A DNA stretch of 64,000 nucleotides. Origin: Oikopleura dioica (lineage: Eukaryota > Animalia > Chordata). The translations under genes were made by a program, and so were the position numbers. The notes below the pieces were generated by a model. That model worked only from the letters and a program-made list of their open reading frames with translations. It was not told the DNA's origin and searched no databases. The stretch's first letter is position 1; each line of letters opens with the position of its first letter. This document shows, piece by piece, positions 10,203-17,491 of the stretch. The stretch spans positions 14,756,001 through 14,820,000 of the forward strand of contig OU015567.1 in assembly GCA_907165135.1 (NCBI GenBank), read 5' to 3'.

Positions 10203-11488
10203 CTAGTTGGATTTTCGGAGTTTGCTTGAGGCGTGATCGACGGGATAACAGGAGGGTCGTTTTCGTTCGGGACGATCTTTTTCGCGCTGCAGTTCCATCT
10301 GCTTGTGCATGAATTTCTTGTACAGGTTTGGCTTGTCGGCGACGATCTGTTGGGCGTTGTCGTCATCGTCGGAGTCGTAGTGGATGTATTTGGGGAACTG
10401 AAGGAACACTTTTAGCTTGTTATCGACGAGGTCATAATCCGGGCTTGTAAGACTGTGTAGTAACCTGAGCTAAGCTCATGAAAGAGCTAAAATTGAAGGC
10501 CGCGTAGCGGCTTTTCCAAGAACGAAGCCGCAGAGCTACTTCGCAAAAATTACAATTCCAATCCATTAGGATTGTAAGGTTTCTTGATTGAACTTTTTCA
10601 AACGAAAACTTCTTCGATCAAACTTTGCTAAAAACAAGATGGCGGGGCTAATGATGAGGGTTTTCTGTAGGAGAAGGAGGTCACCGGGAGAATGATAAAA
10701 TAAAAAAGTTTGTTTTGAAGAAGCGCGGCTTGTTTCCTTTAGCGCCTTCTTCACTCCTTGATTCGCACTATAAACGTCAGGCGCTGCCCACGAGCTCGGC
10801 AATAAAAGTATCAGACTTGAGAGGCTAATCATGTGATTTGCACTCGGTAATGCACCATCACAAAGTCCCTCGAAAACTCCTCGGTAAAAAATAATTCAAC
10901 AAATAAAAAAAAATCAAACCAAATCAACGAACAAGAAAATTTGAGAAAGAAAATCTGGGTCAGAGCAAACTAAAAAGCGAAAGAGAGAGAGATAGTATGC
11001 GGAAATTGAGGAAGAGCTCGTTTTCAAGAAATAAAGGTCAGTCAAACAAAACTTTGATTGAAACTGATAGTTTCTCTTATTTGATAGTTTTTGAAATCTA
11101 AATTGGATTAAAAAATCATGCATTTTTATCATGACTAGCTAATGAATCTATTCAATAATGTTGAATAGTAATAATCATTTTATGAGGTGCCCCTATTAAA
11201 TTCTGCAGATGACGAATAATCGTACGATAAATGTATTTAATCTAGAGCTACAAATTCGTGAAATATGAATTGTTGCGATAAATAGGTATCGTTATGGTCT
11301 GTTAGTTCAAACTGCACCTAAGAGCCATTTTCGAAGAAGCCTTATTTTACAATTAATTTTTGTTTCATTTATATTTTGAAACTTACGGTTTCTGGAGACT
11401 TTGAAGCTCTTTCCGTGACAGTAACAATTTTCGCTTTCGAGAAATTCTGTCTGTTTCTACTCGGCAAGTCTTCGAACAATCTGTTCAT
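10203..11488 (-). CDS. Uncharacterised multi-exon gene
   Basis: First exon MNRLFEDLPSRNRQNFSKAKIVTVTERASKSPET followed by a gtaagt donor; later exon-like ORFs 10566-10832 and 10203-10430 (DYDLVDNKLKVFLQFPKYIHYDSDDDD); exon chain not resolved. Confidence 0.3.
10439..10545. mobile_element. Truncated short family A MITE
   Basis: Degenerate left TIR CCGGGCTTGTAAGACTGTGTAG, AACCTGAGC block and GGCCGCGTAGCGGCTT hairpin; right end not found. Confidence 0.45.
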
Positions 11489-12612: not shown

Positions 12613-15600
12613 ATGTCGGGCGAAACAACGAAGCAACGAAAACTCCAACACAAGAAACGCCGACCGCATTTCCACAGGTACACCCTTAATCTCCGGAAAG
12701 AGAAAAACCGTAGAAAATCAGTAGGCAAAAATAGCATAATTCGTAATTCCACCGCTTTACTTACCACTCAGAAAATCGGGCAAATCGTGGCTCAGGTAAA
12801 AAAAGAACAAAAACGAACTTTTTTGAAAGAAAACTTACTTGCTACTGGTAATTACATTTGCGTGCCAATTAAAACATAAAACCACTACGAGTTACAGTAA
12901 GTTCCTGGGCTCGGCAACATTTGCAGGAGACCTGAGTCAGGCTTCTAAAAGGACTTCAATGAAAAGCTGCGGCTTTTTTAAAAAAGATGAGCCGCGAATT
13001 TTCATTGAAGCTCTTTCAGAACCCTGACTCAGGCCTCCTACACAGGTTACCGAGTTCGCCTAATTAACTATTTGATTTTTGATCATGCGTTTTTGAACTA
13101 ATTAATCGAGCTAGCCGACTAACTCTTCCTTTTTCAACCTTTTTGCGTTGGAAAAAAGGTCATTTGAGCGTAATAACTTAGGACCATTTCCACAAAAACA
13201 CACATTTGCATTTAAAAATTAAAATTGTATGCGTTCCTTCTTAGCTAACCTTTTTGAATAATTAATCAAGCTGCACAAGCGATAAGAAAGAATAAATTTT
13301 ATTTTCAGGCAGCGAGAAAAGGTTCTCCGTGGAAATGACGATCCGTTGGCGGCGGTATTTTCTTGGGGCGTCAGGTACTTATCTTATTTCCGAATCGTCT
13401 GTTGTACAAATCTGCGTTTTAAGCCATCATCAGCGAGAGCTGTCTGTCATTCCTCAGCCGAAAATGCTGCTAGCTGACGATTTCAAAGCGTATTCCAAGC
13501 TATGTGTTTGAAAATCGAATAAAAAAGGAAGAAGGCATCATTTGATGGCAAAATTATTCAAACACTGTCAGTTAAAAGTGGAAAATCACGCGTTCAACCG
13601 AACCTTGTTACCTGGCCACTACAAGGCAAGGGCTAATCGATACTGAGAAATCGAGTTTGATTACTTTGGCAGGAGGATAGGCTCTTTTTTCACTCAATAA
13701 TACAGGCTCATCGGATTCATTCTGTATTTATCCGCGCTTAATCCGCGCTCTACTGAATAATTCATTCTATAAATGATGCATATTCTGAAATCGAAACGAA
13801 ATTATTTGAAAAGGCCATTATCATAAATCCTTTCTCCTTTTTCCTGCCAAAGTTTCAGTACTTCAAGTACCGCGCTAACCCCTCTAAGGTCAAAGAGTAC
13901 TGCCCATTAGTTTTCCGCGGACTGCGAGAGCGTTTTGACATTTCCGAGGTAAGCCCTAATTTGTGCAGGAGATAGATTTGCCTATTTACCTAAATTAATC
14001 TAGGATGATTATACGGATTCCCTATCGCTGCATCATATTGAGCCTCTTATTACACAAGGAATCGTTCTCTAAAGAAAGTACAGTATCAATCTTACATAAA
14101 ACAATACGGTATTGTCAATACCTCTATGCTGAGCAACCTGTGCAGAGACCTCAGTCTGGGTTCTGCGCGACCTTCAATGAAAGGGCTTTCAGAACTCTGA
14201 CTCAGGTTTTTACGCAGGTTCCCAAACTGAGCGTCTGTGCTTGTTTCATCTTCTTTTAGTGAAGATATTCTTTTTTGAAACGAGGAAAAGATGAAATCGA
14301 AAAGATGGAAGAGGCGAACGCAGACGGAAGAATGCCCGGAAAACTGCGAAAACGCGACATCCTAAGATCCTACTGCGGTCGATTCATCGTCTCCCTCATC
14401 TCCACCGAAGATGTCGAGCAATTACATAATGTTTTGCCTAGCTATTACGCCATGGATTCGAAAAACGTTACTTTTCAGAATTGATCAACTTTTTTTACGA
14501 ACTTGAACTTTGTCCCGTGACGAGTAGTATAACAGCCGCCGTCACGAATCTATGAAATGTTTATTGCCATTCTGTAATTCATAAAATAAGTCATGAATCC
14601 GAATGAAAGCCCACGTCGTCGAGCAAAAAGGAGAAACCTTGCTTCCAAACTGGCTTGGTCTCTACAGATGCGGCATCAGCAATCGCTCAGACAGATATTT
14701 ACTCGTCACTAAGTGAGTCAAGGCTCCAGTAGATTGCAACTAATGACGGGTTTACTAGATCTATAACGCGGCGGATCGAGGTGCTCTCCGAAGCCTTCCG
14801 ACTCAAGGGGACGAAAATGGAGAAAATCGAAAAGAAGCAAAAGAAGGAGAAGAAAAAGGAGGAAAAAGAAGAAGACAAGGAAAAGAAAGAACTCAGGGTG
14901 AGAAAGATTCCTTTGAGGGTTTTTTGTATTGTAGATAAATAATAGTTTGTACATCATACAAGCATAGAAAGATCAGTGTGAGGTTTTGTGTCGGATAAGA
15001 TAATGGATTTTCTTCATTGCCTTTCGCTTGAACCTCTTTCCGCAGCTGAGACAGACATGTTTCTTGAGCCCAGCCCGGACCTCGTCCCAGCTGGAAATGC
15101 TAGACCAATTCATGTCATGAACGAGCTCATCTTCGTGCGCATTTTCCATGTGAATTTCGAGCGCGCCGGCGTGATAGAAGCTCTTTGCGCAATAGTCGCA
15201 GTAATACTCGACGATTTTTTCGTTTCGTCGCAGCGTTTCGGAGTTGATCTCTGTCCTGTTAAGGGTTAATCGTCTTCCGAGGCGTTGGTGACGGGTGGGG
15301 ATTTCACTGACAGACTTGAGCTTTTTAATTGTCGCGTGGCGGGAGTAGGAGACGATGTCGGTGTGAGTAGTTGTGCACATCTTTTTCTTGTTGTTTGAGT
15401 TTTCTGGGTTCTTATTCCGCCGATCTGGTTATATAAAATCTTCGTCTAGCGCCCTCTCGAGATGACCAGCAGGTGATCATAACAGGATCGGCGGCTAGGA
15501 GCCTAATACAAGTAATTATCTAGGTTGCAGGATCAGAACAGCCGCCCAGCTGCGCGAGAAATCCCTATCGGCGAATTTAGGACAACATCGCCAATAGACG

Positions 15601-16497
15601 CTACGTCCCGCGGAAATTTACCGCACGCCGCCTATTCTACTTAGAAAATACAAACTCCCAGAAAATCTCGCTAATTAGCTCTTTGAAATTTTTGATATTG
15701 TGAATTGAATCGATAATCTTGCTCTCAGAAATTAGAGCTAGTATTGACCTTAATTTAGGAGCCTGAGTGGCTGCAAAGTGGAAATCGCCTTCACCTTATT
15801 CCATCTGACGCGGAAAGGTTCAGAACTTATTTGAAAAATGACCTTGAGGTAGGATGACCTTGAGCGATGAAGGGGTTTTAATTTGGTTATCATTTTAGCT
15901 CTTGCAGCGATTGAAATTGATGAATTACTCGCTCGATGTCCGCCTCTGTCCTCAATCAGGTATGTAACTTCGACACTTGGCATTTGAAGGAACATAAGAG
16001 TCTTTGATTTATCATTTCCTTAATGACAATTAAATCAAAAGACGACGAGAAAGAGGAGAACCACGACTCGGGGCACGATGGCGGCGCCAATTCTGGCGAC
16101 AATCGCGATTCTGAAAGCGATGAAGAGGACGAGTTTGAATCGTCGGAGGCTCCTACCTTCCGTTTCAAGCTAGGTAACTCAAATATTTATTCCTCGCTGC
16201 CGTTAAAACAGACCTTCTTTTTAAGAGAATGGCGGCATTGTGTATCTGAGCTTGAATGAAATTCTGAACCACTACGATACCAAGAAAAAGGCCCAAAACG
16301 CTGTGAAATCCGCGACTCATGGTGTAAGTCCTTATTCCTTCAAGTAGCCTCTTTTTCAGGTTTATTTCAGTGCTGCAAGCAAGTTCCATGTTGCACCAAC
16401 AAAGAACTAAAAAGACAAAGCATCGCATACGCACAAGAGTTTTATGACTTGCTTGTCTCCTATTTTTTCGGCGCAAGCAGGCTCGATTGCATCATGA
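12613..16497 (+). CDS. Phosphatidylinositol-5-phosphate 4-kinase type 2 (PIP4K2)-like protein, probably catalytically dead, ~12 exons
   Basis: Exon chain: IVAQ/RQREKVLRGNDDPLAAVFSWGV/..PQPKMLLADDFKAYSK/LKVENHAFNRTLLPGHYK/VKEYCPLVFRGLRERFDIS/../HVVEQKGETLLPNWLGLYR/../LLQRLKLMNYSL/../LNEILNHYDTKKKAQNAVKSATHG, colinear with PIP4K2A/B. Confidence 0.85.
12905..13059. mobile_element. Short family A MITE in PIP4K-like intron 1
   Basis: Left TIR CTGGGCTCGGCAAC is an exact family A terminus; CCTGAGTCAGG and CCTGACTCAGG blocks; degenerate right TIR. Confidence 0.75.
14124..14231. mobile_element. Short family A MITE (degenerate) in a PIP4K-like intron
   Basis: CTATGCTGAGCAACCTGTGCAGAGACCTCAGTCTGG ... 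CTGACTCAGGTTTTTACGCAGGTTCCCAAACTGAG. Confidence 0.6.
14973..15380 (-). CDS. Intronless two-finger C2H2 zinc-finger protein nested antisense in a PIP4K-like intron
   Basis: YYCDYCAKSFYHAGALEIHMENAH and HVCLSCGKRFKRKAMKKIHYLIRH; TATATAA about 50 nt upstream on the minus strand. Confidence 0.7.
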   Translation of the reverse strand: MCTTTHTDIVSYSRHATIKKLKSVSEIPTRHQRLGRRLTLNRTEINSETLRRNEKIVEYYCDYCAKSFYHAGALEIHMENAHEDELVHDMNWSSISSWDEVRAGLKKHVCLSCGKRFKRKAMKKIHYLIRHKTSH

Positions 16498-16666
16498 GTT
16501 TGACCGATTTCAAAAAGACGTCTTTGATGCATCCGTCTAAAAACTGTTCTGTCAGTGCAGAGAGCGACTTCTTTTAAAGCAGTAATCGTAATCAACTGAA
16601 GGCAGTTATCAATCCATTAAAGCATCAGTTACAGCCATTTATAAGCAGTTACCATTTATCCAGCAG

Positions 16667-16845: not shown

Positions 16846-17491
16846 TCCCACAGCCAGGGCCCTAGAATCACGTAAACTAAGATTTCAACTTCAGAACGAC
16901 GAGGACAAAAAAGTCAACCCGGAACGATATAGCCGCCAGTTCACTGAATTCCTTTCTTCTGCTGTCTTCACCCAATGGAATTAACAATTTCAACCTTTCC
17001 CGCGCCTGGTTCATCAAATAACTATTCATCCTAAACCAACTCGGAAACTCTTCATTCACCGCACTTTTTCCAAAAAAGAAAACAAAATCGTAGTCCATCT
17101 CTTTTTGTGTCTGTCCAAAAATATATTTATCAAGAGTTCCTAAATGGATAAGCAGCGGTGCTCTCTATCATTACTTTCAACTTCAATTTATACAAAAAAC
17201 AAACAGTACATGATAAATCGTATGATATCTTCACTGGAGAAAAAAGAAACCACCCGTCCAAAATTCTTTCCTTTATGTTCATCCAACAAGTGATTGTAAT
17301 TCCTCAAGTATCCATCCGACTCTGTTCAGTGTTGTGTTTAACTTTATAAAAAGAAAAGTCCTCTTTGGAGGACGAAAAATCTTGAATTGAAAATCTTAAA
17401 GTGAATTTCAGAAATAAGAAATTCGAAAATATTTAAATACAAAATTCAAAGTTAACGCAAATTTAACATGCCTTGTCTTTTGATTTCAGTA

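What the first reader, a model, noticed from the sequence alone, without database searches (positions are those of the whole stretch)
12613..16497. PIP4K2-like lipid pseudokinase: all four catalytic residues replaced in an intact gene
Seen: exons stay in frame and colinear with PIP4K2, yet the ATP-binding lysine motif IIKT reads IVSL (Ser at 14392), DLKGS reads RLKGT (14799), MDYSL reads MNYSL (15923) and IIDIL reads LNEIL (16258). The Gly-rich loop is also degenerate (GKLRKRDILRS). The N-terminal dimerisation region (DPLAAVFSWGV, LLADDFKAYSK, KEYCPLVFR) and the specificity loop (HYDTKKKAQNAVKSATHG) are conserved, and there is a basic N-terminal extension. Known: K150, D216, D278 and D369 of PIP4K2B are the catalytic residues, and PIP4Ks have catalysis-independent roles such as restraining PIP5K. 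Inferred: a dedicated non-catalytic scaffold or dominant-negative dimer partner.
Basis: partly seen in the sequence, partly recalled or inferred. Interest (0 to 1): 0.75.

Follow-up and report, generated by a model that had tools for sequence, protein, structure and literature searches.

The report
Kinase-dead sole PIP4K of Oikopleura
The only PIP4K-type lipid kinase gene of the planktonic tunicate Oikopleura dioica has lost its catalytic residues yet is expressed and very strongly conserved, so this chordate seems to keep the protein only for a non-enzymatic job, most likely restraining PIP5K.

Summary
The window is Oikopleura dioica (Okinawa-type assembly; not human) and carries a 14-exon, about 415-aa gene colinear with type II PIP kinase. 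Ser replaces K150, Arg replaces D216, Asn replaces D278, Glu replaces D369, and the Gly loop is degenerate.

Corrections:
- The real last exon is 16895-16984, not the ORF ending near 16497.
- D369 is still Asp in every other Oikopleura lineage sampled.
- The basic N-terminus is ancestral, not an extension.
- Four introns are non-canonical.

It is not a decaying pseudogene. Against North-Atlantic-type genomic contigs dS is 1.0, dN 0.023 and omega 0.022 (0.004 for exons 1-8). Spliced-leader-capped full-length mRNAs exist in sister lineages. It is the Okinawa orthologue of the uncharacterised CBY18232.1/E4X3M8.

All ten appendicularian sequences aligned (about seven lineage groups) share S/N/R-or-I at these sites. 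Ascidian orthologues and 101 other PIP4K2 proteins are canonical. No second type II gene was found in the genome, so a "dominant-negative partner of an active PIP4K" is unsupported. The N-terminal PIP5K-inhibitory region and the specificity loop are retained, and three intact PIP5K1-like genes exist.

Best reading: a natural pseudokinase that acts as a PI(4,5)P2-dependent brake on PIP5K. The scan earlier noted a kinase-dead GRK2-like gene elsewhere in this genome.

The parts
10997..11036 (+). Alternative upstream first coding exon (MRKLRK...), GT donor at 11037, cis-spliced to the acceptor at 12594-95
   Evidence: tblastn of the sister-lineage mRNA product P0207; sequence; same isoform in P0323/P0324
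12596..12677 (+). Exon 1; start codon at 12613. The AG at 12594-95 is the acceptor, used for spliced-leader trans-splicing or for the upstream exon.
   Evidence: L030 mRNA begins with the 3' 26 nt of the spliced leader followed by AGATAAAG..., as in the window. Leader plus GT occurs 52 times in this genome and 0 times in the control. SL read-through products P0329, P0333, P0209.
13309..13374 (+). Exon 2 (DPLAAVFSWGV), GT-AG on both sides
13424..13499 (+). Exon 3, containing the KMLLADDFKAYSK motif region. The 3' end is unresolved: it is 13499 if spliced as in sister-lineage mRNA (which would make a CT-AG intron here), or 13505 if the GT at 13506 is used (adds 2 aa).
13572..13625 (+). Exon 4, followed by a GC-AG intron (GA-AG in sister-lineage contigs)
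13889..13948 (+). Exon 5 (VKEYCPLVFRGLRERF)
14004..14058 (+). Exon 6, followed by a GA-AG intron (14059-14290) that also holds a MITE-like palindrome
14291..14451 (+). Exon 7: degenerate Gly loop GKLRKRD and the IVSL motif with Ser (14392-94) in place of K150
14452..14611 (+). Intron 7. It has no GT/GC/GA-AG reading in frame. GCC is repeated at both ends, so the boundary is ambiguous (CC-AG, GC-AA or AT-CC). The intron is absent from lineages B and C.
   Evidence: intron-retaining transcript P0334
14612..14712 (+). Exon 8 (GETLLPNWLGLYR...LLVTK)
14759..14897 (+). Exon 9: RLKGT with Arg (14799-801) in place of D216, followed by a Lys/Glu-rich stretch
15759..15848 (+). Exon 10
15899..15959 (+). 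Exon 11: MNYSL with Asn (15923-25) in place of D278
16042..16173 (+). Exon 12: acidic insert with the appendicularian-invariant motif NHDSGHDG
16226..16323 (+). Exon 13: LNEIL with Glu (16258-60) in place of D369, and the specificity loop HYDTKKKAQNAVKSATHG
16895..16984 (+). Exon 14, the true last exon (NDEDKKVNPERYSRQFTEFL...), stop TAA at 16982-84
16371..16577 (+). It is a candidate alternative 3' exon, in phase with the exon 13 donor.
   Evidence: 80% nt identity to L019, with differences concentrated at one codon position. Omega is 0.12. No transcript evidence was found.

Best explanation
This is the single-copy Oikopleura dioica orthologue of type II phosphatidylinositol-phosphate kinase (PIP4K2/PI5P4K). 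It is a real, expressed, strongly constrained gene whose product keeps the PIPK fold but has lost the residues needed for phosphotransfer, so it is a natural pseudokinase.

Shown here:
- the replacements themselves;
- their fixation across appendicularian lineages;
- purifying selection;
- mRNA in sister lineages;
- single-copy status;
- orthology to PIP4K2.

Inferred: the protein works non-catalytically, as engineered kinase-dead PIP4Ks do in mammalian cells. It would bind PI(4,5)P2-rich membrane through the retained basic specificity loop. It would then use the almost invariant N-terminal sheet, including the retained M-L-L-x-D-D of the VMLxPDD motif, to bind the three intact PIP5K1-type enzymes of this genome and damp them, buffering PI(4,5)P2 levels.
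For: Replacements: Ser for K150, Arg for D216, Asn for D278, Glu for D369 and a degenerate Gly loop. K150, D278 and D369 are described as essential for catalytic activity in PMC3823935.

Family contrast: in 101 other PIP4K2 sequences these columns are K 100%, D 99% (D278) and D 97% (D216). All 10 appendicularian sequences have S, N and R/I.

Selection: window against North-Atlantic-type genomic contigs over 381 codons gives dS 1.01, dN 0.023, omega 0.022. Exons 1-8 give omega 0.004.

Expression: sister-lineage full-length mRNAs exist (L030 with spliced leader, L031).

Identity and fold: the orthologue is CBY18232.1/E4X3M8. Pfam PF01504 scores 120 bits for it. Its AF2 model matches PI5P4K crystal structures with target-normalised TM 0.79-0.88.

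Orthology: sister to ascidian PIP4K2 with support 0.975. Ascidian orthologues are canonical.

Single copy: no other type II locus in the assembly.

Pattern of retention: of 48 positions at least 90% conserved in other PIP4K2 and lying in residues 1-125, 38 are kept. Beyond residue 125, 39 are kept and 33 lost, among them the TRNVF nucleotide-recognition Asn and Phe.

Possible targets: PIP5K1-like genes with intact DLKGS, MDY and IID motifs lie at C4:14.18 Mb, C2:5.62 Mb and C1:0.38 Mb.

Non-catalytic PIP5K inhibition by kinase-dead PIP4K, through the N-terminal VMLxPDD motif and PI(4,5)P2-dependent recruitment, is published: PMC6619495 and PMC10482388.
Against: - No biochemical data exist for this protein. 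Loss of activity, nucleotide binding and PIP5K binding are all inferred from sequence.
- The Pro of VMLxPDD is Ala/Thr in appendicularians.
- No RNA from the Okinawa lineage itself was available, so the splicing of its CT-AG-like intron 3 and of intron 7 is inferred from the sister lineage.
- The absence of a second type II gene rests on six-frame searches of one assembly.
- Asp at the D369 position is retained in all other lineages, and a Lys/Arg-rich Gly loop has appeared. Residual or unconventional catalysis is therefore not excluded.
Confidence: 0.6

Rival explanations
1. A conserved pseudokinase whose retained function is something other than PIP5K restraint. Examples are a PI5P or PI(4,5)P2 reader or adaptor, a nuclear role, or a scaffold built around the appendicularian-specific invariant NHDSGHDG motif and the Lys/Glu-rich stretch.
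For: The same conservation data apply. A lineage-specific invariant motif lies in the otherwise variable insert, together with a conserved 12-aa insertion at the Gly loop. The Pro of the PIP5K-binding motif is lost.
Against: The most constrained part is exactly the N-terminal region that the published work ties to PIP5K inhibition.
Confidence: 0.27
2. Still an active lipid kinase with rewired chemistry. A Lys of the new GK[LF]RKRD loop would substitute for K150, as in WNK kinases (from memory), with the retained Asp/Glu at the IID position.
For: The basic residues gained in the Gly loop are invariant across lineages. Asp at D369 is kept in all lineages but the window.
Against: D278 (Asn) and D216 (Arg/Ile) are lost as well. 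So are the nucleotide-base-recognition Asn and Phe and most of the GSTVxREAS substrate-side loop. The Pfam score is halved relative to Ciona, 120 against 261 bits.
Confidence: 0.09
3. A dominant-negative or regulatory dimer partner of a separate active PIP4K.
For: The N-terminal dimerisation sheet is conserved.
Against: No second type II gene was found by four different whole-genome searches.
Confidence: 0.02
4. A decaying, unexpressed pseudogene.
For: Non-canonical splice sites and the lost catalytic residues.
Against: Omega is 0.022 at dS about 1, with open frames in every lineage. Spliced, SL-capped mRNAs exist.
Confidence: 0.01

Closest known systems
Canonical type II PIP kinases (PIP4K2A/B/C; ascidian orthologues such as Ciona intestinalis PIP4K2A-like, P0211)
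   Same: Orthologous by tree. Same fold, same N-terminal sheet (E 2e-21), same type-II-style specificity loop and the same C-terminal helix in the true last exon.
   Different: K150, D216 and D278 are replaced. The Gly loop is degenerate with an insertion, and the TRNVF Asn and Phe are lost. About 36% identity. The stem branch is 1.38 substitutions per site.
Engineered kinase-dead PIP4K2A/B/C and the weakly active PIP4K2C, which restrain PIP5K without catalysis (PMC6619495; PMC10482388; PMC13416441, seen by title and abstract only)
   Same: A PIP4K body without catalysis that keeps the N-terminal motif region and membrane-binding loop. This is the proposed mode of action here.
   Different: Those are laboratory point mutants, or an isoform that keeps all catalytic residues and coexists with active paralogues. 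Here the loss is natural, multi-site, ancient and affects the only copy.
PIP5KL1/PIPKH, a PIPK-family protein reported to lack intrinsic activity and to associate with type I PIP5Ks (from memory, not checked here)
   Same: A catalytically inert PIPK-family member thought to act through PIP5K1.
   Different: PIP5KL1 is a separate paralogue related to type I. This protein is the type II orthologue itself.
Two Tetrahymena PIPKs lacking K150/D278/D369 (PMC3823935), and degenerate PIP4K2-like proteins of Neoechinorhynchus, Didymoeca and Cichlidogyrus
   Same: Natural loss of catalytic residues within the PIPK family.
   Different: Different residues and lineages. Copy number, expression and selection were not examined there. 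None is documented as the sole, strongly constrained copy in a chordate.

Membership tests
PIPK superfamily (Pfam PF01504, PIP5K domain) | Significant match to the family profile above the gathering score | tested here: met
   Orthologue P0321 (about 95% identical to the window's product) scores 120 bits against a cut-off of 27. Single window exons reach only 11-14 bits. The joined window model was not submitted.
PIPK superfamily (Pfam PF01504, PIP5K domain) | PIPK fold | tested here: met
   The AF2 model of P0321 (pLDDT 72.7, pTM 0.74) matches PI5P4K alpha, beta and gamma crystal structures with E about 1e-26 and target-normalised TM 0.79-0.88.
Type II PIP kinase (PIP4K2/PI5P4K) by descent | Type-II-specific N-terminal region | tested here: met
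   E 2e-21 to PIP4K2A/B/C chains against 0.2 to type I.
Type II PIP kinase (PIP4K2/PI5P4K) by descent | Groups with PIP4K2 orthologues at the position expected for a tunicate | tested here: met
   Sister to the ascidian clade (support 0.975), then vertebrates (0.952), on a FastTree of 111 sequences rooted on a cnidarian. No type I outgroup was included.
Type II PIP kinase (PIP4K2/PI5P4K) by descent | Type-II-style specificity (activation) loop, KKKA..A.K..HG | tested here: met
   HYDTKKKAQNAVKSATHG aligns with THYDAKKKAAHAAKTVKHG. The role of this loop is from memory.
PI5P 4-kinase as an enzyme | K150, the ATP-binding Lys | tested here: not met
   Ser at 14392-94. Ser in 10 of 10 appendicularian sequences, Lys in 101 of 101 others.
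PI5P 4-kinase as an enzyme | D278 of MDYSL | tested here: not met
   Asn at 15923-25. Asn in 10 of 10 appendicularian sequences, Asp in 99% of others.
PI5P 4-kinase as an enzyme | D369 of IID | tested here: inconclusive
   Glu in the window but Asp in all other appendicularian sequences.
PI5P 4-kinase as an enzyme | DLKGS motif and the Gly loop GxSGxxF | tested here: not met
   RLKGT in the window, ILRCC in one lineage. The loop reads GK[LF]RKRD with an insertion.
PI5P 4-kinase as an enzyme | Phosphorylates PI5P to PI(4,5)P2 | not testable with these tools
   Needs a kinase assay.
Non-catalytic PIP5K regulators (kinase-dead PIP4K mode of action) | N-terminal VMLxPDD motif | tested here: inconclusive
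   KMLLADD: the M, L, L, D and D are kept, Val is Lys and Pro is Ala/Thr.
Non-catalytic PIP5K regulators (kinase-dead PIP4K mode of action) | Binds and inhibits PIP5K on PI(4,5)P2 membranes | not testable with these tools
   Needs binding and bilayer assays. Candidate PIP5K1 targets are present in the genome.

The most novel reading that the evidence does not exclude
Oikopleura, and perhaps appendicularians generally, have given up PI5P 4-kinase activity altogether. They keep PIP4K purely as an allosteric PI(4,5)P2-homeostat acting on PIP5K. That would be a natural separation-of-function experiment, showing that the indispensable role of PIP4K in a chordate is the non-catalytic one.
Probability: 0.4. 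Interest if true: 0.72.

Novelty: new variant of a known kind. Interest (0 to 1): 0.6.

Why it matters
Whether PIP4Ks matter mainly as PI5P kinases or as catalysis-independent brakes on PIP5K is debated, and it bears on whether to inhibit or degrade them as drug targets. Here the sole copy in a chordate lineage has been catalytically disabled since before the sampled Oikopleura lineages split, while its N-terminal half evolves at omega 0.004. This gives an evolutionary argument for the non-catalytic role. It also offers a ready-made reagent: a natural kinase-dead PIP4K that can be tested against PIP5K. It further raises the question of how this animal handles PI5P.

Tried and rejected
- Pfam on single window exons gave only sub-threshold PIP5K hits.
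- The PDB search with exon 9 found nothing, probably because of the low-complexity Lys/Glu tract.
The sister-lineage mRNA product showed this was wrong.
- I first assumed a GT donor at 13506 that adds two residues. Sister-lineage cDNA splices directly after the AAG, so the window's usage stays unresolved.
- The first AF2 run, on a 24-sequence alignment, was unusable (pLDDT 52.6). A 111-sequence alignment gave a usable model.
All later work used coordinates and ids.
- One contig look-up failed and was not needed.
- The literature searches found no paper describing a natural PIP4K pseudokinase or the Oikopleura PIP4K. The search for the D278A kinase-dead mutant was blank.
- The decaying-pseudogene and dominant-negative-partner readings were rejected.
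Full report
**What the window is.** The window is C5:14756001-14820000 of a 64.28-Mb, 19-contig assembly with about 41% GC. This matches the published Okinawa Oikopleura dioica assembly OKI2018_I69 (64.3 Mbp, 19 scaffolds, 41.06% GC, 11% non-canonical introns; PMC8008620). The closest named protein is CBY18232.1, "unnamed protein product [Oikopleura dioica]".

**Handling of the spliced model.** Window exons were searched one by one by reference. For whole-protein steps (Pfam, alignment, fold, tree) I used natural full-length orthologues returned by the databases, mainly P0321.

**The observation.**
- Ser at 14392-94 aligns with K150 of PIP4K2B.
- Arg at 14799-801 gives RLKGT in place of DLKGS.
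- Asn at 15923-25 gives MNYSL in place of MDYSL.
- Glu at 16258-60 aligns with the Asp of IID, D369.
- The Gly loop reads GKLRKRD and carries an insertion of about 12 residues.

K150, D278 and D369 are cited as essential for catalytic activity in PMC3823935. D216 is part of the near-invariant DLKGS motif. I could not confirm from a paper that D216 itself is catalytic.

**Corrected gene model.** The product of a sister-lineage mRNA (P0207; cDNA L031) aligns to the window in 14 coding blocks. They are 12613-12677, 13309-13374, 13424-13499, 13572-13625, 13889-13948, 14004-14058, 14291-14451, 14612-14712, 14759-14897, 15759-15848, 15899-15959, 16042-16173, 16226-16323 and 16895-16984. They sum to 1248 nt, or 415 aa.
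- The true last exon encodes the canonical NPE.Y...F.EF helix.
- Exon 1 starts at an acceptor (AG at 12594-95) that is used in two ways in relatives. One is trans-splicing to the spliced leader: L030 begins with 26 nt of leader, which occurs 52 times followed by GT in this genome against 0 for the control. The other is cis-splicing to an upstream exon, which maps to 10997-11036.

**Introns.** Nine introns are GT-AG. Four are not.
- Intron 3 is CT-AG if spliced as in the sister lineage, where it is GA-AG.
- Intron 4 is GC-AG, and GA-AG in some sister contigs.
- Intron 6 is GA-AG.
- Intron 7 has GCC repeated at both ends and no G*-AG reading.

cDNA against genome in the sister lineage shows all four are removed exactly. 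These same four introns are absent from the genomic contigs of two more distant lineages (L014-L017). One unspliced transcript retaining intron 7 was also seen (P0334). No RNA of the Okinawa lineage itself was available.

**Not a pseudogene.** Marine metagenome contigs and metatranscriptome or Logan transcripts supply several related lineages.
- Against North-Atlantic-type genomic contigs (L018-L023), 381 codons give 136 synonymous and 20 non-synonymous differences. That is dS 1.01, dN 0.023 and omega 0.022.
- Exons 1-8 give omega 0.004.
- Against more distant lineages, synonymous sites are saturated while pN is 0.07 in exons 1-8, 0.14 over all aligned exons against lineage B, and 0.22 against the lineage D mRNA.
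- Full-length, spliced, SL-capped mRNAs exist.

**Age and extent of the loss.** In a 111-sequence alignment, the K150 column is Lys in 101 of 101 non-appendicularian PIP4K2 sequences, D278 is Asp in 99% and D216 is Asp in 97%. All ten appendicularian sequences have Ser, Asn and Arg/Ile at these sites. The ten fall into about seven lineage groups. D369 is Asp in all of them. Only the window has Glu, and I could not tell whether that is fixed in the Okinawa lineage. Ciona, Clavelina and Phallusia orthologues are fully canonical. A tree rooted on a cnidarian puts the appendicularian clade (support 1.0, stem 1.38 substitutions per site) next to the ascidians (0.975) and then the vertebrates (0.952). 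The gene is therefore the tunicate PIP4K2 orthologue. It was disabled after the split from the sampled ascidians and before the sampled Oikopleura-type lineages diverged.

**Single copy.** Four whole-assembly searches were run.
- Pfam PF01504 finds three PIP5K1-like loci, a PIKfyve-like locus and fragments.
- A type-II-specific N-terminal query hits only this locus.
- A vertebrate PIP4K2C hits the three PIP5K1-like loci and this locus.
- An appendicularian full-length protein hits this locus and, apart from one weak match (E 0.03) at the PIP5K1-like C2 locus, nothing else.

The three PIP5K1-like genes show intact DLKGS, MDY/FDY and IID/IVD motifs. One of them also shows the G-loop and Lys in the translated ORFs.

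**What is kept and what is lost.** Of 138 positions at least 90% conserved in other PIP4K2, appendicularians keep 77 and have lost 43.
- In residues 1-125, 38 are kept and 10 changed, mostly conservatively.
- Beyond residue 125, 39 are kept and 33 lost. The losses include the Asn and Phe of TRNVF, which the PDB mutant titles mark as the nucleotide-recognition residues, and much of the GSTVxREAS loop.
- The specificity loop lysines are kept.
- A new invariant motif, NHDSGHDG, sits in the variable insert.
- Pfam scores 120 bits against 261 for Ciona.
- The AF2 model of P0321 retains the PI5P4K fold.

**Mechanism.** Published work shows that kinase-dead PIP4Ks restore PI(4,5)P2 and insulin-PI3K control. 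They do so by directly inhibiting PIP5K through the N-terminal VMLxPDD region (PMC6619495). PIP4Ks are also recruited by PI(4,5)P2 as low-affinity sensors, and catalytically inactive mutants inhibit equally well (PMC10482388). The pattern of constraint here fits that role: the N-terminal sheet and basic loop are preserved while the catalytic and nucleotide sites are dismantled. This step is inference. Alternatives are a different scaffold or reader function (0.27), rewired residual catalysis through the new basic Gly loop (0.09), a partner of an unseen active PIP4K (0.02) and a pseudogene (0.01).

**Novelty.** The protein is deposited but uncharacterised. Searches of the paper library found no description of a natural PIP4K pseudokinase or of the Oikopleura protein. 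Catalytically inert PIPK relatives are known as a kind: PIP5KL1 (from memory) and two Tetrahymena PIPKs. Sporadic degenerate PIP4K2-like proteins also turned up in an acanthocephalan, a monogenean and a choanoflagellate. I therefore class this as a new variant of a known kind, notable because it is the only copy in a chordate and is under extreme constraint.

Noticed in passing
window 14973-15380 (- strand): A 135-aa gene with a C2H2 zinc-finger match (Pfam zf-C2H2, 28 bits) is nested antisense in intron 9 of the PIP4K-like gene. A 135-aa gene is called at the same place in sister-lineage contigs L018-L020 and L023-L025.
   Followed up: partly
window 16371-16577 (+ strand): A conserved open frame lies inside the last intron. 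It is 80% nt identical to L019, with 19 of 27 differences at one codon position and omega 0.12. It is in phase with the exon 13 donor and loosely resembles the C-terminal helix. It may be an alternative or duplicated 3' exon. No transcript was found.
   Followed up: partly
window 13500-13571, 13626-13888, 14059-14290, 14452-14611: The four non-canonical introns are exactly the four that are missing from the genomic contigs of lineages B and C. Short repeats sit at their junctions (GCC/GCC, AAG/AAG), and intron 3 has a perfect 9-nt inverted repeat near its ends (GTGTTTGAA/TTCAAACAC). This suggests recent introner-like gains.
   Followed up: partly
window about 12905-13050 and 14135-14220: Copies of a palindromic MITE-like element lie in introns 1 and 6. 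The close relative L024/L025 has a 115-nt intron 6 against 232 nt here, consistent with a recent insertion.
   Followed up: no
L019-L023 versus L018, intron 6 donor: The first base after the exon is polymorphic (G or A) in North-Atlantic-type contigs. That gives GA-AG in one contig and AA-AG (or GA-GA) in the others, yet mRNAs are spliced at the same place.
   Followed up: partly
window 16042-16173; alignment A1: The motif NHDSGHDG is invariant in nine of the ten appendicularian sequences that cover it (NHDSGNDG in one). It lies within the otherwise variable acidic insert and is absent from other PIP4K2 proteins.
   Followed up: no
P0076, P0082, P0118: Other PIP4K2-like proteins have altered catalytic residues. 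Neoechinorhynchus agilis has K150 to R and D369 to K. Didymoeca costata has K150 to Q and D369 to K. Cichlidogyrus casuarinus has D278 to N and D369 to E. Copy number and constraint are unknown.
   Followed up: no
G000 C1:14739293-14739721 and C1:15513779-15514207 (L012): Two identical-scoring PIP5K1-like C-terminal fragments with internal stops, probably duplicated pseudogene pieces.
   Followed up: no
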